Of a stretch of 35,725 nucleotides of DNA, positions 643 to 9,434 are shown piece by piece (position 1 is the stretch's first letter; each line of letters starts with the position of its first letter). The position numbers and the translations under genes were made by a program. The notes beneath the pieces were generated by a model. It saw nothing but the letters and a program-made list of their open reading frames with translations, was not told where the DNA came from and did no database searches. This DNA comes from Pelomyxa schiedti (taxonomy: Eukaryota; Protista; Evosea), in contig JAHLWZ010000453.1 of assembly GCA_020536535.1 (NCBI GenBank), forward strand, positions 1 through 35,725, written 5' to 3'.

Positions 643-742
643 NNNNNNNNNNNNNNNNNNNNNNNNNNNNNNNNNNNNNNNNNNNNNNNNNNNNNNNNNN
701 NNNNNNNNNNNNNNNNNNNNNNNNNNNNNNNNNNNNNNNNNN
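643..742. other. Assembly gap (100 N)
   Basis: Run of exactly 100 N, a typical placeholder length. Confidence 0.99.
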
Positions 743-3700
743 ATGGTTTATGTGTTTTTCATACTGTTTTTGGGGAACTTACGTTTGGATGTGTTAGTGG
801 CAAGAATGGAGACAGAAAATCTTACGCGATTTGGTGGTGGGTCACATCTGCACAATCACATATAAATCTGATTTATGAGATAGGTTCCCAAGATGGATTG
901 CCAGTATTCTTCTCCCATTGTTTCTTTTGCTCCAACCTGTACGTTTTGTTTAGTTTGTTCTTCCCCCTTCATTGTATATTTACTTATATAAGAACTCAAG
1001 GCGGTAATTTTATGGGCTGCATATTCTATCTCTATTCGAGAAGGAAAAATGGCGTGCTGGATTGCCGTATTGTCCTCCCTAATTGCGATTATCCTTCTTG
1101 TCCTTAGAGGCAGACATGTATCCAAAAGGTGGATTTCTCCACCTGCAACCAAGCTACTCTTGAAGAGCATCAGTGTGTCCTTGCTTTACTCCAAAATGCC
1201 ATTTAATTGCATGTCTTTAGTTGAGGCACAGTTGGATTTCCTTGCCTTCCTTAGTACTGTGGCAGTATTGGTGACTATATTGAGAGCAAAAAATATTATC
1301 AGTTTTATTTCTCGAGGTGATCCTCGCCCCTACCGCCTTTATGTGCATGTTCAGATGGTTGTTGACTTTTTTTCCTTGATAGGCTAAACAAGTACCTCCG
1401 TTTAGGCTGTCTCTGTTGCAATCCTCTTATGCACCCCTCTCCTTCTTGTTATTGCTGTGACAGTGTGGAGGATACCAGCAACCTACAGAGCAATGAAAAT
1501 TACTGCTGCAAACCAACGAAAAAGGCATGCTGATCTAAGAGCGAAAAAAACTCTGAAGGCGAAAGAAGGGACGAATCAAAAAAAGAGAGATCATTTAATG
1601 GCATTGCTCTATGTCGCCTATGAGGATGTGAAGGGACCAGTGCATGTCATTTTCCAACAGACATATGGATGCTTGATTGACGCCCCCTTATTTGCATTGT
1701 TGATTCCCGTCCTTTTGTCACTTTGGCGTGCTCCCTCAGTCATCAGGGAGTTGTACAACACGGATTTAGAAAAGCGCCGGAGAGTGGCTGCATGGGCATT
1801 TTATCAGTGGTTATGTGACTTGCCCTTTGTTTGCATGCTTATTGTAATGCTTGCAGCTCCCTGGCGAATGTAGTAATCTCTCTTTTTTCCCTCCAATTTT
1901 TTTCCCTCTAAAAGACACTAAACAGGTATATACTATACCGGAAATATCCAAATGTATGCCGTTATGACATTTGGGAGCAGTTCATCAACCTCGTGTTACT
2001 GGATACAGCTTCTTTGTTGTCCATTTTCCTAATTGGTGTTACAATCTGGAGGATAAGTGACACGCGCACCAAATTGAAATCCCGAGGAGAAGCCCAACTT
2101 GGCGTTGTGCTTGTCAAACAAGCTCTGGAAGTGATACGAGACTTACCTTTCTTTTTGCTGCTTATTCCTATAATTTTCACAATCTGGCACGCAAAAAAGA
2201 CTTTGTTGGCTCTCGTGGCTGCCACACCTGATCTTCGCAGAGATATAGCACTAGTTCACTTCATAGAGTGGCTTAAAGACCTGCCCTACATAGTAATGTT
2301 CATTACTGTCACCCTTACGCTGTACAGACTACCGCCACTTCTTTTCAAACTTCGAAGGCAGGAATCACATGAGGATTCAATTTGGAGGGTACTTGTTGCA
2401 CAGCAGATGAAGTGTCTGTTCTGTGATGTGCCAGTTCTAGTTGCTTCAGCCTTCGTTTTTTTAAGCAGGTGGCACTGGCCCACAATGCAGAGGAACCTTC
2501 AGCAGTGTGATGACAAGCTGGGATTTGGCTTGCACAGAGCTGTTTTTCCTCCTTTTATGGAGTGCTTGTATGATAGCCCTTACTTCATTGCCGTGCTGCT
2601 GCTGTCATGTTCATGGAGGGCACCCTGGTTTTTACCAAAATTATGGAGACCAAGCAGTTTGAACGAGAAAAGAAGCATATGCCGGGAGTTCTTTATTGAT
2701 TTAGTCCTTGATGTGCCTGCAGTCCTTTGTGCGGTTGTTGTTTTCCTGCTTGTCTGGAATGCCTCCACACTAAAACATCAACTTCTTCATCCTACACCAG
2801 AACAAAATCGTCACAAAGCATGCTTTTCCTGCTTCAAATCGACAGTCAAAGATTTTCCCTACATCATGGGCTCCTTTGTGATCTGCATTACTCTAATTCG
2901 AGCACCTCTGTTCTTATTCCAGGTGAAGAGAACAAACACTCTCGAATCAAGAAAAAATGTTGTTTTCACAAATGTTGTGCTGATACCTCTTGACGTCATT
3001 GCTATTCCCGCTCTGTTTTTATTGCTTATATCCCTGTGGTGCACAAAACCGGCGTGGGGTATATTGAAGTCACTCTATGAGGAACTGCAATCACCAGTAC
3101 CACTTTCAACAGAGAACTTCCTGAAGTACTATAGTGACATCTTTTCTCTCCTGGGGATCTTGATGTGCACTGCTACACTTGTTGCTGTGTGGGCGCCACT
3201 TGCTTCGGTTGGCCCGTGGAGAGGTTACTTGTTGGTGAAGGAACTGAAGGAGAACACTGAGTACTGGGATTGTTGGACACACTTCTCCCTCTGCTGCAAA
3301 CATGGAGGTCTCTTGATGGAAGATTGGCTTTGTGGAGTTTTATTCATAATGCTCCTCTGTTCTTGGAGAAGTGTACCCACTTTCAAATCTGTGTTCTTCT
3401 CTGAAGCAGTGCTATCTTTTTCACATTGTCATCATGCCGTTTTATCTCAGTTGGGATTCTTTGTTGAGGATTTACCTTACCTGATCCCATTCATCTGTAC
3501 CCTTATCATTTCTCCTTGGCGTATTCCGAGTTTGGTCCAGAACATGATTTCAGCACAAGGTGATAAGACCAAGCCAACAAGAGATTTCTTACAACAGAAA
3601 AGAGAGTTTGTTGTTCACCAACTCCGGCTTGGGGTGTTAGATGTCTTTTGCGCCGCTGGTATTATCTTAATTCTTCTCACACTGTGGAGAGTTCCCTCTC

Positions 3701-6700
3701 TTCGTAGAAATTATAGAACGAATTCTTGGCATACTGTGGTTTGTGATGAACTTGTAGCATGGTGCAGTGATGCTCCTTATGTTCCTTTTGTCCTTCTCTG
3801 TTTCCTTTTCCCCTGGCACTACAAAAAATTGAGGACTTCTCTTGCAAACGATAACTGGCACAGTGGGGCCATGTTCCTTGCTTTCGAAGGACTTCTGGAT
3901 ATCCCTTGCTTCTTGTTAGCTCTATTTGTAATTGCTACTGTGTGGAACGCACATAAGCTGTGTGTAAAAATCAGAGCCTGCGAAGGTTTTGACAGGCACC
4001 ACTGTGTATGGCGATATTTCCTCAAAACAGTGCTGGACCTTCCCTATATTCTCATGTGCAGCATTTCCCTTTTGGTTCCTTTGAGAAGTCCACTCCTCAT
4101 CAAGGATTTTTGTAGATGCAATGGTCACAACGAAAAATGCACCGCCGCTGTGATGCATTTCTCTTTACTGTTTCTCGATCTATTTTGTGTGTTGATGTCA
4201 ATTGTCCTTCTGTGCACTCTCTGGCAGGCTCCAACATTTATTTCGATCGTCAAAGAATATGTTAGGAGCTTTACTCAGCTGAAGAGTTGCTCAACATTTC
4301 AATTTAATTTGAGCATTCACAAAGACATTTATCAACTGTTCTGCGCTTTGATAATTGACGTGCCTTTCTCACTCTGTCTTGCACTTACTCTTGTGTGCCC
4401 ATGGAGATTGTTAGAATTTGTGAGGTACGCAAGGCAAGCACATTGCACTGCTTCCTTCTGGGAGAAAAGAATTAAACTCCTAAAGTTGTCTTGGCTGGCA
4501 ATCGTCGATATCTCATGTCTCCCTTTGTTCATTCTCTTAATTCTATCGTGGCGAAGTTACCTCACAATCTCTTGGATGAAGGCCAACTCCACTTTTTCAC
4601 AAGCCCCGTCTTCAAATGTTGTTGGTAAGGCACCCTTGACAGTTCCCGAGAAAGGTGAGACTTCAGCCAAAGGAGCCAGAAAGAAAAGGAACAAACGTAC
4701 TGAACCCAAGCTTTTCTGTTCGATGTTTTCTCTTCATGACCTGTATACACCTGTCCATCCCTTTCTCTTTTTTCAGGGTATTGAGCTGTTAATTGATTCT
4801 GTGTACATTGCCGTTGCACCATTTTTAATGTGGAGAATCCCTTCAGTGTTGTACAAAGCTTTTTTCCAAGATATTACAACTGCTGTACTCAGGCGGAAGC
4901 TTGTATCTGATCAGCTGCATGAAGTTGCTTTGGATTTACCTTACTCCATAATTTCAATATTTTTGTTGCTGGCACCATGGAGAGTGTGGTTCCTTTTCCG
5001 CAACTGCTATCAATTACTTGGCAAACCAGATACTCTTAAACGCAAGGAAGTTGTAGCACAGACCATTGAAGGGGGAAAAGATCTGGCCTGCTTTTGCATG
5101 CTGATCATCACCACTCTTTCATGGAGAGGGGTTCTTTTGTGGATCCGACTCTTCACGAATATTGCTGACTGGAGGGATATTGCTTTTACAGGTTTGTGGG
5201 AAAGAAGGAGAAATAACTGTAACGCCTTTCAATAGAATTCAAGGACTTCCTTTTTGATTTGCCATATCTGCCTCCTTTTGTACTTGTTTCTCTTCTCAGC
5301 TTTTGGCGCCTTCCAGCAATGTTTAAAGTATTCCAAGATAAAACAGTCACAGATTCCTCCAAGCGCACATTTGTACTTGCTCAGTTCAAAGAAATGATCA
5401 GTGACTACACTTCAGTCCTGCTCATTATCGTCATCTCCATTACTCTTTGGCGAGCTATTGCACTCTGGCGTGCTCTTTTGAGCAAGAAAAAAGGAGACAC
5501 TTGGCATAGTGTAGTGTTTGAGAATTTCCAAGTGTGGAAAGAGGACGCACCATACGCCCCTCTATTCGTAGTCTTGTGTTTTGTTGCACCATGGAGGGTT
5601 AAAGGCTTGACATACAACTTGCTTTTTAATGTCTCACTCGATACACATGCAAAACACAGAAGTATCATGACCGAGTTGAAGGAGGGATTTCTGGATCACT
5701 TGTCCCTTCTCCAGCTCATTGTAATGCTTGTTACATTGTGGAGGGTGTACCCCTTAATCCGTGCCTTGTACAGTAATATCGAAGGGAGAACCTGTCGCAC
5801 CATTATCTTTGTTCAATTTCGTGAGTGGCTGCAGGATACACCTTACATACCTCTGGTTATTGTATTGTTCATTTGCATGCCATGGCGGATTCCTTCCTTT
5901 GTGCATGAAATTCGCAATTCCACTTCTCCATGGCGGAACCATGCACTCTCCAACGTGCAGAAGGGAGTAAGTGACATCCCTGCTGCCCTCTGTGTGCTAG
6001 TTCTACTTCTCTCCTGGAGATGTGTGTTCACTATTAAATCTCTCTGGTTTCATCAAACTGAGACTTCCGAGTGGACGACGGTTGCATTTTCTTGCTTTTG
6101 GGAGTTGATGTACGATCTCCCTTGGGTCCCTGTTGTTCTTGCCATGGGCTGTTTCTTCCCATGGCGGCTTGTGCACTTTTTCTTTCATCTCAAGAACTCT
6201 TCTTCTGTTCAGAGAAGGGATCTACTTGCATATTTGATGATGGGGTGCAAAGATTATCCTGCTGCACTGAAGTCCACAGTTATACTTTGCACTGTGTGGT
6301 ACCTTCGGCGGTACCTGTCAAAACTGTTGGCATCTCCTTCATCGTTTCATGCACTCACTTCAAAATACTTCATAAAAGTGTGTCTCGACATGCCTTATAT
6401 AATGTGCCTCGGCGTATCAATTGCCGTTCCTTGGCGAACCCCACTTGTTGTATACGATTTGTACAGGTACGGCTCGAAGTTGAGGGAGAGGAGATACATC
6501 GCTCGAACCCATATCAGAAGACTTCTCTATGATCCACTTTGCATATTTTGCTTCTTTTTCATACTCCTTACTGCCTACCGCCTAAAAACAACTCTGCGAC
6601 AAATTTACAACAAATTAAGAGAGGAACAGGAAGTACTTGAAGAAATGCACCGGGAGTTGGCTGTTAAAACCACCAAACCATCTAAAAGAAACAAAACACA

Positions 6701-9434
6701 AGTTCTGAATGGTCCATCACCCATGCAGTGGGCTCTTTTCTCAGAATTTAAGAAACTATGCACTGATTTGTTATGCATTGCAATATGCACTATTTTAGCT
6801 TGGCGGTTACCATCAACAATCAGCCGGATGAGGCTGTGTGCCAATGAAAAATTGCGTCTGACAGTGTGCCTCTACAGTTTGAATGAACTGTGCGAAGATT
6901 TACCTTATACAGTACCGTTCCTTGTTGTCCTGCTTTTTGGCTTGCCCCGCGTCACGTATTTTCATTTCAAGGAAGACAAACGAAGAGATGGCTTACTGTG
7001 GTGTTTATTTGCTTCACCCAGTATCACAAGTTATGAAAAACGCATGGCTGTGGCTGCTACAGCCAGGCTCGCTGTGGCAGATCTTCTGTGCTTTATTCTA
7101 AGTGTACCCATTTTAATAACAATGTGGCGTGCGAAATCGGCCTACACTGCTTTCACCCATTCCGCACACAAGCATCAAGTTATTGTTGATCAGTTCTTCT
7201 GTTGGATATCAGAAGTTCCATATGCATCTCTGGTTCCTTTAATGGCACTTTTCTTCCCATGGAGATTATTATTTTTGGCACGAGAAAAGCGCTTACACGA
7301 TGCCCGTGCCGTGAAGGGCAAGATTCTACACCATTTCTTCATTGGATTTGCTGATATTTTTTGCTTTGCCTTGCTGTGTTTGCTTCTACCTTTCCCCTGG
7401 CGAATTGTTGGATTCTACAGAACCAGAAAACTGACTGGTGAATTCCACATGAGTGTTTTTTACCAAGTTTTCCTATTACTCTCCGATGCTATTCTATTTG
7501 TGCAGATTCTATTTATTATTGCTTGTGTTATACATGTTCCACCACTTATTGGATACACTGTATCAAGTATTTTCGAATACTTCCGTTCCCAAAAGTTAAG
7601 GCGAAGTGCATATCATATTCCAATGTCACCAAATTCTGGATCTCCAGTCAGCAAACTTCCAGAAGAGTGTCTTGTCGAAATTTTCTCTCACCTCTCTGCA
7701 CGTGATATCGCCAAGTGTTCAGAGGTTTCCAAACGTTGGTACAACATAACTCAACTGGAGAGTCTGTGGAGGACTTTACTTGAACGCGACTTTCAACTTC
7801 TTGGCTCGAATCGGTCTTCAAGGCTTGTATACCAATTTCGATATAGAAGGCGAGCACTTGGGACTATTAGGTCAACACTGAGGACAGGGATAGTTGGCAT
7901 CAGGGCAGTTACAATGCGTTTATTTATTCAATCCGTGCATACTATTCCGCACAGCATAGCATTGCCTCTAAAACTACTTGGACTAGTTATAGGTGTACCA
8001 ATTATTCGGTATCATCAATACCGTGCACGTACACGAATAGGAATTACTTACATCGGCGTCCTTACGAGAACTGTAAGCACTGATTTCTGGCATCTTGGAA
8101 GAGCCTTCTTTGAAGCAGTTGCAATTGTGTTCCCTTTCTTGGTCTTAAATGAGATTTCTTTTGCTCTGAGCACTATTAATTTCTCGGTCCTCTACATAAT
8201 TACACTTGGTGCCAGAAGGCCAGAGCTTATACCAATGCCCCTTCTTGTACTTTTGCATTGCGTGCATTCGGTTGCTGCACCGTTCTTAGTACTCTTACAG
8301 ATACCAATTCTCATTTTGCCCGAACTCTGTCTGTGTAAATTCTACGGCATCTCTTTGTCCATCCTGGAATTGGGAAGAGTAATGTCATGGAGTTTTCTTC
8401 TCTTTACATTAGTGTGGACCTTCATGATTTTCCCTGTCTGTGAAGCTCTCACAATTCAATACATAGAGAAATATTTTGTTGCATTCTCCCCTGGATATCT
8501 TTACTGGCATATCGGTCGGGCAATCAAACACCTTTCCTTGAAAATAACCAAAACAGTTCAAGCACTCTACAGGGCATTTGCCCATTTGTTACACAAGGCT
8601 GTTAAAGCAATCTCCTCCGTTCTGAAGACTCTACTCTCCGTACTAATGCGCCTAGTTGAGATTCTCAGACTCGTGGTTCAACTCACGCTGCAGCTAGTTT
8701 TTGCTGTACTGGGAGCAAACAACCGGCTGCTTGCCATGATAACCCACAAGTGCTTCCTTCACGGCCAGCTCGGCAACATTCTCCTCACCCCTGCCTGCCT
8801 CGCCTGGGTGTCCTGGCCGCTCCTAATCCCCCTCCAGACACGCAGCATCGCCCTCGGGATCCCTGCGACCGTCGCGTTCCTGTTCCTCACACGCCAGGCG
8901 ACTCGCGTAGTCAGCCGGCACTGGAGGCACTGGAGCTTCTCGCCAACGCCTCAGCTCACACTGGAGTCCCTCACTCTCGTGCCCGTGGAGCAAGGCAACG
9001 CGGTGAGCGCCACGCTGCTCGGCACCAAGCCAGCTTCACTCAGCATCAAGGCCGCTTGCTTGTGCATCAAGTCCAAAGGCACCTGGGCAGCTCTGGACCT
9101 CGCACTGGGCCACGGCGCGGTCTCTTTCTTCAGAGCAGTCCTGCACCCTGTCAGACTGAGCCCGGGGATGTTCCCCACCAGTGCAATTGCGGCCGGAAGC
9201 TCTACTTTCAGAATCGCAATGAGGCTTCCTGTTTCCAAGCCGGTTCTACTTGCGAAGCTCGAAGACATGCGTGACAGGGCGGACAACGCTACTCTTGAAT
9301 TCGTTGTGGAATTTGGTGAATTCTTGATACACTGGGAGGCAGATGGTGTTTTGTTTAAAATCACAGCCACTCCCAATGACTTACTGCGCACATTACACAC
9401 AAACAAGAACCTCTTGGAGTTAGACAAATATTAA
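743..9434 (+). CDS. Giant (>2,800 aa) multi-pass membrane repeat protein with an internal F-box; 5' end truncated by the gap
   Basis: ORFs 1049-1387, 1457-1873, 1993-5235 and 5259-9434 join in frame through GT-AG introns (QM|AVSV, PWRM|YILY, AFT|EFKDFLFDLPY). Upstream exons (YAIWW|FPRWIASILL..QP|VQLKAVILW) extend back to the gap. The protein has recurrent D-x-P-(hydrophobic 15-18)-W-R units. Stop codon TAA at 9432-9434. Confidence 0.88.
7650..7795 (+). other. F-box motif inside the giant membrane protein
   Basis: SKLPEECLVEIFSHLSARDIAKCSEVSKRWYNITQLESLWRTLLERDF matches the F-box consensus LP.E.L..IF..L...DL..C..V.K.W.......LW. Confidence 0.92.

What the first reader, a model, noticed from the sequence alone, without database searches (positions are those of the whole stretch)
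743..7650. Unrecognised membrane-embedded tandem repeat (D-x-P...W-R, ~48 aa, roughly 35-40 copies)
Seen: each unit has an Asp-x-Pro cap, a 15-18-residue hydrophobic helix ending in W-R/W-H, then an amphipathic basic helix. Examples: IRDLPFFLLLIPIIFTIWHAKK, LKDLPYIVMFITVTLTLYRLPP, KEDAPYAPLFVVLCFVAPWRVK. Units tend to alternate between a DxPY...PWR type and a D-phi...TLWR type, suggesting a ~100-aa super-repeat. Two similar basic loops (KKRNK ~4680, KRNK ~6685) hint at a still larger internal duplication. Inference: a membrane solenoid or scaffold (pore, tether or curvature device). I cannot assign it to a named Pfam family.
Basis: partly seen in the sequence, partly recalled or inferred. Interest (0 to 1): 0.75.

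Follow-up and report, generated by a model that had tools for sequence, protein, structure and literature searches.

The report
Giant membrane-repeat F-box protein family
An amoeba gene encodes a protein of about 2,800 residues built from about 40 copies of a 48-residue membrane-helix unit followed by an F-box, the tag that recruits ubiquitin-ligase machinery; it belongs to a large, unnamed and unstudied protein family that occurs in many protists, including the laboratory amoeba Dictyostelium.

Summary
Window bases ~1050-7550 (+ strand) are one Pelomyxa schiedti gene, publicly annotated as hypothetical protein Pelo_5677.

**The repeat**
- It has 38-42 tandem units of about 48 aa.
- Each unit reads: amphipathic lead-in, Asp-x-Pro, 15 uncharged hydrophobic residues, Trp-Arg, then a short amphipathic basic helix.
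- Two unit types alternate, giving a ~96-aa super-repeat.

**The rest of the gene**
- The same gene continues into a canonical F-box, a multi-helix hydrophobic domain and a beta-rich tail.

**Relatives**
- No Pfam family, solved structure or paper matches the repeat.
- A profile of the double unit finds 765 protein clusters: Amoebozoa including Dictyostelium discoideum, Anaeramoeba, Cyanophora, Picozoa, Paulinella and a diplonemid.
- Long forms carry the F-box after the array; short forms lack it.

**Reading**
- Most likely this is a membrane-integral SCF substrate receptor or scaffold. That function is inferred, not shown.
- Membrane topology is unresolved, because the loops after both unit types are equally basic.
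- The suggested larger internal duplication is not supported.
- The public gene model probably drops about 500 coding residues.

The parts
643..742 (.). Assembly gap (run of N) just upstream of the gene. The true 5' end may be missing.
   Evidence: Sequence read. The Mastigella orthologue has about 94 N-terminal residues with no counterpart in the window.
806..9434 (+). Whole gene (public model Pelo_5677), including the stop codon at 9432-9434.
   Evidence: P0001 is 100% identical to the window ORF. It maps to nine exons.
839..885 (+). Annotated small intron (47 nt) between short 5' exons. Not independently verified.
   Evidence: Mapping of P0001.
952..994 (+). Annotated small intron (43 nt). 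Not independently verified.
   Evidence: Mapping of P0001.
1172..1222 (+). Small intron (51 nt).
   Evidence: It appears as a gap in the tblastn alignment of the Mastigella orthologue.
1358..1405 (+). Small GT-AG intron (48 nt), containing in-frame stops.
1870..1925 (+). Small GT-AG intron (56 nt).
5192..5235 (+). Small GT-AG intron (44 nt) joining the two long exons. It splits one repeat unit.
1223..7550 (+). Tandem array of 38-42 units of about 48 aa (D-x-P, 15 hydrophobic residues, W-R, amphipathic helix). A and B types alternate.
1926..5191 (+). Long exon with about 21 units, one uninterrupted reading frame.
3124..3864 (+). In-frame 741-nt stretch that the public model removes as an intron. 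It is an open frame made of intact repeat units and is probably coding.
   Evidence: mapping; open frame; collinear with the 2863-aa Mastigella transcript protein.
4006..4776 (+). Second in-frame stretch (771 nt) that the public model removes. Also an open frame of repeat units, including the KKRNK loop.
5236..7550 (+). Repeat-bearing part of the last exon (about 16 units).
7629..7760 (+). F-box domain.
   Evidence: Pfam F-box-like 52.5 bits (cut-off 24.3) and F-box 46.5 bits (cut-off 20.5). Skp2 F-box by sequence, E 7e-6. Model superposes on Skp1-bound F-boxes at rmsd 0.8-2.4 A.
7812..8921 (+). Conserved C-terminal hydrophobic multi-helix domain, with about 7-8 hydrophobic segments.
8940..9404 (+). 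C-terminal beta-rich domain (pLDDT 80-89), conserved in family members with and without the F-box. Fold not assigned.
   Evidence: Weak likeness only: NPC2 Z 5.0, C2 and Kir C-terminal domain.

Best explanation
The region is the repeat domain of one intron-poor Pelomyxa schiedti gene. The protein has about 2,780 residues if the long exon is read through.

**Shown**
- It has about 40 tandem 48-residue units. Each has a uniformly uncharged 15-residue hydrophobic helix, opened by a near-invariant Asp-x-Pro and closed by Trp-Arg. A short amphipathic basic helix and a polar linker follow.
- Two unit types alternate.
- The array is followed by a canonical F-box, a conserved hydrophobic multi-helix domain and a beta-rich tail.
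- It belongs to a large, unnamed family spread across several eukaryotic supergroups.
- The genome encodes Skp1.

**Inferred**
- The hydrophobic helices are embedded in a membrane. Most simply, neighbours run antiparallel, so each A+B pair is a transmembrane hairpin and the array forms a long ribbon of helices covered on its surfaces by amphipathic helices.
- The cytosolic F-box recruits Skp1-cullin. The protein would then act as a membrane-integral SCF substrate receptor or scaffold that marks membrane or membrane-proximal proteins for ubiquitination.
- F-box-less short forms keep the array and the C-terminal domain. These two parts therefore carry the family's core function, which is still unknown, and the F-box couples that function to ubiquitination.
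For: - **Periodicity and unit count:**
- **Membrane character:** core positions 13-27 and 61-75 have K/R at 0.03 or less and D/E at 0.01 or less over about 1,100 units each. The core has a helical moment of 0.05, against 0.18-0.19 for the post-Arg helix. The only solved-structure sequence matches of the unit profile are de novo designed transmembrane bundles (6m6z at E 3e-5, 6u1s).
- **Alternation of A and B types:** found in Pelomyxa and independently in Mastigella.
- **Predicted structure:** a periodic long helix plus short helix per unit.
- **F-box:**. Skp1 genes are present in the same genome.
- **Conserved architecture:** 23 of 165 fetched relatives carry an F-box directly after the array. 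Pfam confirms this in Mastigella, Balamuthia, Soliformovum, a JGI protein and a GILJ transcript protein, and weakly in Picozoa.
- **C-terminal domain:** the last 538 aa are conserved in members with and without the F-box.
- **Family size and spread:** 765 clusters at E<=1e-3 and 126 at E<=1e-30. Organisms are named.
Against: - No experiment exists for any member, and all public names are 'hypothetical' or plainly wrong.
- Topology is unresolved. Loops after A and B units are equally basic (about 4-5 K/R each) and N-glycosylation sequons are rare in both. That fits the positive-inside rule poorly if the helices alternate across the membrane.
- The strictly hydrophobic stretch is only 15 residues, which is short for a bilayer.
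- The AlphaFold models have low confidence (pLDDT 62.9 and 68.7; pTM 0.35 and 0.34), and I could not inspect coordinates.
- The Asp-Arg pairing idea is unproven. Joint loss of Arg(i) and Asp(i+1) had an odds ratio of 7.9 in one alignment but was absent with a single-unit model.
- Some F-box proteins act with Skp1 outside SCF ligases, so ligase function does not follow automatically.
Confidence: 0.55

Rival explanations
1. Monotopic hairpin array that shapes membranes, a 'super-reticulon'. In each unit the semi-hydrophobic pre-Asp helix and the 15-residue core form a wedge or re-entrant hairpin that turns at D-x-P. All basic loops and the F-box stay in the cytosol. Forty wedges, each with an amphipathic helix, would bend or stabilise curved membranes, and the F-box would be accessory or act with Skp1 outside a ligase.
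For: - All loops are alike: net basic and poor in sequons, whatever the unit type. This is what one expects if they all lie on the cytosolic side.
- Conserved basic residues sit at both ends of the 28-30-residue hydrophobic segment (R/H 78% at position 47, R 88-90% at position 76), with Asp-x-Pro in between.
- Every unit carries an amphipathic helix.
- From general knowledge, reticulon and REEP proteins combine hairpins with an amphipathic helix.
Against: - AlphaFold draws one continuous helix through D-x-P in all 16 modelled units, with the break just before Trp-Arg.
- A 95%-conserved Asp at a hairpin tip inside the bilayer would be costly.
- The pre-Asp segment has a polar stripe, so it is not truly membrane-like.
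- The A/B alternation is more naturally explained by two opposite orientations.
Confidence: 0.22
2. Soluble or peripheral alpha-solenoid of the HEAT/ARM type, with a two-helix unit of about 47 aa. The hydrophobic helices would form a buried core and the protein would be a cytosolic F-box adaptor.
For: - The period of about 47-48 aa and the helix-turn-helix unit match HEAT-like repeats.
- The loops are symmetric in charge.
- The weak fold-search rows are helical repeat proteins.
Against: - Fifteen consecutive positions carry essentially no charged residue across more than 1,000 units, which is not seen in soluble repeats.
- About 56% of unit positions are hydrophobic.
- There is no Pfam HEAT, ARM or TPR hit even at E<=1.
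- The best fold matches have TM-score 0.13 or less (normalised to the model) and Z 6.0 or less, which is the noise level for helical models.
- The unit profile matches only designed transmembrane proteins.
Confidence: 0.1
3. Ion-conducting or mechanosensitive membrane machine (Piezo-like blade, or a path lined by the repeated Asp residues). The F-box would serve only for turnover control.
For: - The size and the number of helices (about 40, plus about 8 in the C-terminal domain) recall Piezo's 38 helices with amphipathic surface helices (general knowledge).
- There is one near-invariant acidic residue per helix.
Against: - No Pfam Piezo or channel domain was found.
- The unit is one helix per 48 aa, not a four-helix bundle.
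- No pore-like module was recognised in the C-terminal model.
- This reading has no direct support.
Confidence: 0.08
4. Artefact: a non-coding or decaying repeat, or an assembly or annotation error, that only looks like a protein.
For: - There is an assembly gap at 643-742.
- The public gene model differs from the open frame.
Against: - The open frames run for 1080 and 1391 codons.
- Transcript-derived orthologues exist in Mastigella, Clastostelium, Pyxidicula and Soliformovum.
- The alignment to the Mastigella protein is collinear.
- Hundreds of relatives exist.
Confidence: 0.02

Closest known systems
F-box proteins, the substrate receptors of SCF (Skp1-Cul1-F-box) ubiquitin ligases, e.g. Skp2, FBXL2, Fbs2
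   Same: A bona fide F-box that passes Pfam thresholds. The model superposes on Skp1-bound F-boxes, and Skp1 is present in the genome.
   Different: - Known F-box proteins pair the box with soluble LRR, WD40, Kelch or other domains placed C-terminal to it, and reach membranes at most through lipid anchors (general knowledge).
- Here the box sits after about 40 hydrophobic helices and before about 8 more.
- No paper in the held library uses any of four phrases for a transmembrane or membrane-bound F-box protein.
Mitochondrial carrier family (SLC25; Pfam Mito_carr)
   Same: By design only: tandem ~100-aa repeats of two membrane helices joined by a short amphipathic helix, with charged Pro/Asp/Arg signature motifs at helix ends (general knowledge).
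   Different: - Carriers have three repeats, against about 20 double repeats here.
- The motif order differs: P-x-[DE]-x-x-[KR] in carriers, against D-x-P ... W-R here.
- There is no Pfam match even at E<=1.
Piezo mechanosensitive channels
   Same: A very large protein with dozens of membrane helices arranged as internal repeats, with amphipathic helices lying on the membrane (general knowledge).
   Different: - The Piezo unit is a four-helix bundle of more than 200 aa with a C-terminal pore module.
- No Piezo Pfam domain or fold match was found here.
TatA/Hcf106, and reticulon/REEP hairpin proteins
   Same: A short hydrophobic helix followed directly by an amphipathic helix. JGI even labels relative P0024 'TatA'.
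   Different: - Those proteins have one or two such elements per polypeptide and act as oligomers. Here about 40 are linked covalently.
- No Pfam match was found, so the public label is spurious.
De novo designed transmembrane helical bundles (TMH4C4, TMHC8_R)
   Same: These are the only solved-structure sequence matches of the unit profile: 6m6z at E 3e-5 and 6u1s at E 0.38. They share an idealised hydrophobic span capped by aromatic and Arg residues.
   Different: These are artificial proteins. The match covers about 26 profile positions and reflects composition and design logic, not ancestry.
HEAT/ARM alpha-solenoid repeats
   Same: A period of about 47 aa with two helices per unit.
   Different: Those are soluble with an amphipathic core. 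Here 15 consecutive positions are strictly uncharged and there is no Pfam hit.

Membership tests
F-box protein (SCF substrate receptor) | F-box domain above Pfam's curated thresholds | tested here: met
   PF12937 scores 52.5 bits (cut-off 24.3) and PF00646 scores 46.5 bits (cut-off 20.5), at residues 798-841 of the last exon.
F-box protein (SCF substrate receptor) | Three-helix F-box fold as seen bound to Skp1 | tested here: met
   The model superposes on 1fs1 at rmsd 0.8-0.9 A over 39-41 residues (46-49% identity), and on 8zuh, 1fs2, 6w66 and 9luo at 1.1-2.4 A. Local pLDDT is 71-79.
F-box protein (SCF substrate receptor) | Partner Skp1 encoded in the same genome | tested here: met
   PF01466 matches above cut-off at five loci of G000.
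F-box protein (SCF substrate receptor) | Physical binding to Skp1/Cul1 and substrate ubiquitination | not testable with these tools
   Needs pull-down and ubiquitination assays.
Unnamed 'D-x-P...W-R' membrane-repeat family (defined here) | Multiple tandem ~48-aa units matching the double-unit profile | tested here: met
   The public model of this gene scores 931 bits with 19 stretches. 765 other clusters score E<=1e-3.
Unnamed 'D-x-P...W-R' membrane-repeat family (defined here) | Conserved C-terminal hydrophobic plus beta-rich domain | tested here: met
   Shared with P0019, P0020, P0023, P0048, P0006, P0092, P0002, P0075 and P0143.
Piezo channels | Piezo Pfam domains or pore module | tested here: not met
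   No Pfam hit at E<=1. No fold match.
Mitochondrial carrier family | Match to Mito_carr (PF00153) with the P-x-[DE]-x-x-[KR] signature | tested here: not met
   No Pfam hit at E<=1 on any exon. The motif is different.
TatA/Hcf106 | Match to the TatA family model | tested here: not met
   No Pfam hit at E<=1. The 'TatA' label belongs to the JGI relative P0024 alone.
HEAT/ARM/TPR solenoids | Match to a solenoid repeat model or fold | tested here: not met
   No Pfam hit. Best fold rows have TM-score 0.13 or less (normalised to the model) and Z 6.0 or less.
Polytopic (bilayer-spanning) membrane protein | Helices that cross the bilayer with defined in/out topology | tested here: inconclusive
   The charge-free 15-residue cores argue for membrane embedding. 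Equal loop charge and rare sequons leave the orientation open. No topology predictor or coordinates were available.

The most novel reading that the evidence does not exclude
This would be a previously unrecognised, ancient eukaryotic membrane architecture, possibly as old as the last common eukaryotic ancestor. Dozens of near-identical single helices, each bracketed by an invariant Asp and Trp-Arg, are strung in one polypeptide into an intramembrane ribbon or 'picket fence' tens of nanometres long. The ribbon organises or senses a membrane domain. In the long forms it couples that domain directly to SCF ubiquitination. That would make it a new class of membrane solenoid and the first membrane-integral F-box receptor.
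Probability: 0.3. Interest if true: 0.85.

Novelty: new variant of a known kind. Interest (0 to 1): 0.68.

Why it matters
If the reading holds, three things follow.

1. **A new protein family.** Proteins of 1,400-3,400 residues with a new type of membrane repeat have escaped Pfam and the papers searched here, although the family has hundreds of members across several eukaryotic supergroups.
2. **A new kind of F-box protein.** The recognition module would be a 40-helix membrane array. This suggests a route by which SCF ligases could read membrane-embedded features directly, a job otherwise assigned to RING ligases such as Hrd1 or Doa10.
3. **A natural model for membrane-protein design.** Very long single-chain membrane helix arrays resemble idealised designed transmembrane proteins and are of interest to structural biologists.

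The short form exists in Dictyostelium discoideum, so localisation, knockout and structure work are immediately feasible.

Tried and rejected
- **Pfam.** Scans of every exon and of 12 relatives found nothing on the repeat.
- **ESM Atlas.** The paralogue P0002 and the C-terminal piece gave no usable hit.
- **Fold searches.**
  - The repeat model gave Foldseek E>=0.55 and VIA-wide best Z 6.0, both at noise level.
  - In the C-terminal model only the F-box is recognised. The beta tail gives weak NPC2, C2 and Kir-like rows with Z 5 or less.
- **Asp-Arg contact test by joint loss.** It was positive in the double-unit alignment (OR 7.9, p 6e-6). It was not reproduced with a single-unit model (OR 1.0), so I treat it as inconclusive.
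- **Topology from loop charge and sequons.** No asymmetry was found.
- **Larger internal duplication linking the two basic loops.** Not supported.
- **Word searches.**
  - The first search, with the last exon, found only the gene's own public model and two relatives.
  - The search with the paralogue alignment found six proteins, including the query.
  - The first search with P0048 timed out. It succeeded when repeated on its C-terminal region.
- **Literature.** Searches for membrane F-box proteins and for the accession numbers found nothing relevant.
- **Joined gene model.** Searches used single exons by reference, or the public protein that a tool returned.
- **Source.** The contig is not human; it is Pelomyxa schiedti.

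Full report
**Source and gene structure**

The window's last long ORF is 100% identical to NCBI 'hypothetical protein Pelo_5677 [Pelomyxa schiedti]'. The contig is therefore from this anaerobic amoeba and is not human. The assembly has 52 Mb in 5,337 contigs.

The gene lies on the + strand from about 806 to 9434. Small GT-AG introns of 43-56 nt were read directly or mapped from the public protein: 839-885, 952-994, 1172-1222, 1358-1405, 1870-1925 and 5192-5235. Two of them (1172-1222 and 1358-1405) appear as gaps when the Mastigella orthologue is aligned to the DNA.

The public 2,278-aa model also removes two much larger 'introns', 3124-3864 (741 nt) and 4006-4776 (771 nt). Several points suggest these stretches are coding:
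- Both are in frame and lie inside an uninterrupted 1,080-codon ORF.
- Both consist of intact repeat units.
- The transcript-derived Mastigella eilhardi orthologue is 2,863 aa and aligns collinearly across them.

The protein is therefore more likely about 2,780 aa. An assembly gap (643-742) sits just upstream, and the first ~94 residues of the Mastigella protein have no counterpart in the window. All searches used single exons by reference or the public protein returned by a tool.

**The observation**

- Hydropathy autocorrelation peaks at lags 47/96/144/192 in both long exons. The value of 0.41-0.49 at lag 47-48 exceeds the maximum of 300 residue shuffles and of 300 block shuffles, which is 0.26-0.32.
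- A unit HMM finds 41 stretches. Counting those above 5 bits plus the unit(s) in the 1223-1357 exon gives 38-42 copies.
- The core is strikingly constant: Asp, x, Pro or a hydrophobic residue, 13-14 further uncharged residues, Trp/Tyr, Arg. That is 16-18 residues from Asp to Arg.
- AlphaFold2 on the last 16 units gives the same pattern throughout, with modest confidence (pLDDT 62.9, pTM 0.35). Each unit has a 28-30-residue helix running from about 17 residues before the Asp to just before the Trp. A 12-13-residue helix starting at Trp-Arg follows, then a short loop.
- The post-Arg helix is amphipathic (helical moment 0.18-0.19). The core is uniformly hydrophobic (moment 0.05).

**Alternation**

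Units anchored on the Asp score 13-16 within a type and 0.4 between types, with 0 of 2000 permutations reaching that difference. Type-specific HMMs give runs such as BABABABAB (exon C) and ABABABABAB (exon D). Long alternating runs also appear in the independent Mastigella protein. The evolutionary unit is therefore a ~96-aa pair.

The suggested still larger duplication is not supported. Exon-versus-exon alignments reach only 22-24% identity in several registers, and they do not pair the two basic loops.

**What the whole protein is**

Directly after the array comes a canonical F-box. After that comes a ~540-aa region with about 7-8 hydrophobic segments and a beta-rich tail of about 155 residues (pLDDT 80-89). 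This region is conserved in relatives with and without the F-box. The tail has no convincing fold match; the rows are NPC2 at Z 5.0, plus C2 and Kir C-terminal domains, all weak. The genome encodes Skp1 at five loci.

**Relatives**

Word-based searches gave a handful of hits. I then built a 94-position profile from 20 double units of this gene and two paralogues and ran it against 1.84 billion representative proteins. It found 765 clusters at E<=1e-3, 413 at E<=1e-10 and 126 at E<=1e-30. Most of the 150 best hits listed are 1,100-3,400 aa, with a minority of shorter proteins and fragments, and carry 3-27 matched stretches.

Named members:
- Amoebozoa: Mastigella, Balamuthia, Pyxidicula, Clastostelium, Soliformovum, and dictyostelids including Dictyostelium discoideum.
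- Other lineages: Anaeramoeba flamelloides, Cyanophora paradoxa, a picozoan, Paulinella chromatophora and the diplonemid Artemidia.

All are 'hypothetical' or carry obviously wrong names ('homeobox protein', 'Rab-GAP/TBC-related', 'Polyprotein', 'TatA').

Across 1,338 double units from 163 proteins other than the two Pelomyxa seed proteins, Asp is 95% conserved, Arg 90% and Trp/Tyr 84%. A basic residue 13 positions before the Asp is 78% conserved. The 15 core positions carry essentially no charged residue.

Two forms exist:
- **Long forms** (about 1,800-3,400 aa). In 23 of the 165 fetched proteins, fragments of such forms included, an F-box follows the array.
- **Short forms** (about 1,250-1,630 aa, roughly 12-16 units). 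These lack the F-box and include all dictyostelid orthologues and the Pelomyxa paralogue Pelo_7295.

Pelomyxa itself has five family loci.

**Comparison with what is known**

- No Pfam family matches the repeats in any member tested.
- The only solved-structure sequence matches of the unit profile are de novo designed transmembrane bundles. This is a compositional likeness, and it underlines how 'ideal' these membrane spans look.
- Fold searches with the repeat model are at noise level.
- Literature searches found no description of a transmembrane F-box protein, of this family or of the accessions.
- By design, the nearest analogues are mitochondrial carriers (~100-aa two-helix repeats with charged signatures), Piezo (dozens of repeated helices), TatA/reticulon-type 'short hydrophobic helix plus amphipathic helix' elements, and HEAT-like 47-aa solenoids. 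Membership in each was tested by Pfam and not met.

**Mechanism**

*Shown:*
- The repeat anatomy.
- The membrane-like cores.
- The alternation.
- The F-box.
- The conserved C-terminal domain.
- Skp1 in the genome.
- The wide family.

*Inferred (confidence about 0.55 for the package):* the helices are membrane-embedded and neighbours are antiparallel, so each A+B pair is a hairpin. The array forms a long ribbon whose surfaces are covered by amphipathic helices. The F-box recruits Skp1-cullin, making the long forms membrane-integral SCF receptors or scaffolds.

*The main weakness is topology.* Loops after A and B units are equally basic and equally poor in glycosylation sequons. This fits the positive-inside rule badly for an alternating topology. 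It keeps alive a rival in which every unit is a cytosol-facing hairpin wedge, a curvature device of the reticulon type. A soluble solenoid is unlikely because of the charge-free cores.

A test for Asp-Arg contacts between neighbouring units by joint loss was positive in one alignment. It was not reproduced in another, so I do not rely on it.

**Verdict**

The object is a new, widespread and unannotated membrane-repeat family, and the window's member is an F-box protein of unprecedented architecture. Function and topology remain to be tested, and the Dictyostelium orthologue makes that practical.

Another first-stage note on this window (s1-386796) had already flagged the F-box part of the same gene.

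Noticed in passing
window 3124-3864 and 4006-4776: The public gene model (Pelo_5677, 2,278 aa) removes two in-frame stretches of 741 and 771 nt as introns. All other introns of the gene are 43-56 nt. Both stretches are open and made of intact repeat units, so the public protein probably lacks about 500 residues. Alternatively these are alternatively spliced 'exitrons'.
   Followed up: partly
window 643-742 and 806-1171: An assembly gap lies just upstream of the annotated start. The three short 5' exons are weakly supported. The Mastigella orthologue has about 94 extra N-terminal residues with hydrophobic segments that were not found in the window.
   Followed up: partly
window 8940-9404: The C-terminal beta-rich domain is predicted with the highest confidence of the protein (pLDDT 80-89) and is conserved in F-box-less relatives. 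It has only weak likeness to NPC2/ML, C2 and Kir cytoplasmic beta-sandwiches. It would need to be folded alone.
   Followed up: partly
G000 contigs C579 (~93.8-97.2 kb), C802 (~56-61 kb), C231 (~96.7-100.1 kb), C851 (~63.3-65.2 kb): Four further loci of the same repeat family occur in the Pelomyxa genome. C579 is Pelo_7295, a 1,379-aa short form without an F-box. The C231 and C851 matches are fragmented by stops or introns and were not examined.
   Followed up: partly
relatives P0021/P0163, P0024, P0065, P0179: Public names of family members are misleading: 'homeobox protein', 'rab-gap/tbc-related', 'Sec-independent protein translocase protein TatA' and 'Polyprotein'. None of those tested is supported by a Pfam hit.
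   Followed up: partly
G000 contigs C76, C911, C832, C165, C1244: At least five Skp1-like loci occur in this genome. That is a notable expansion of the SCF adaptor.
   Followed up: no
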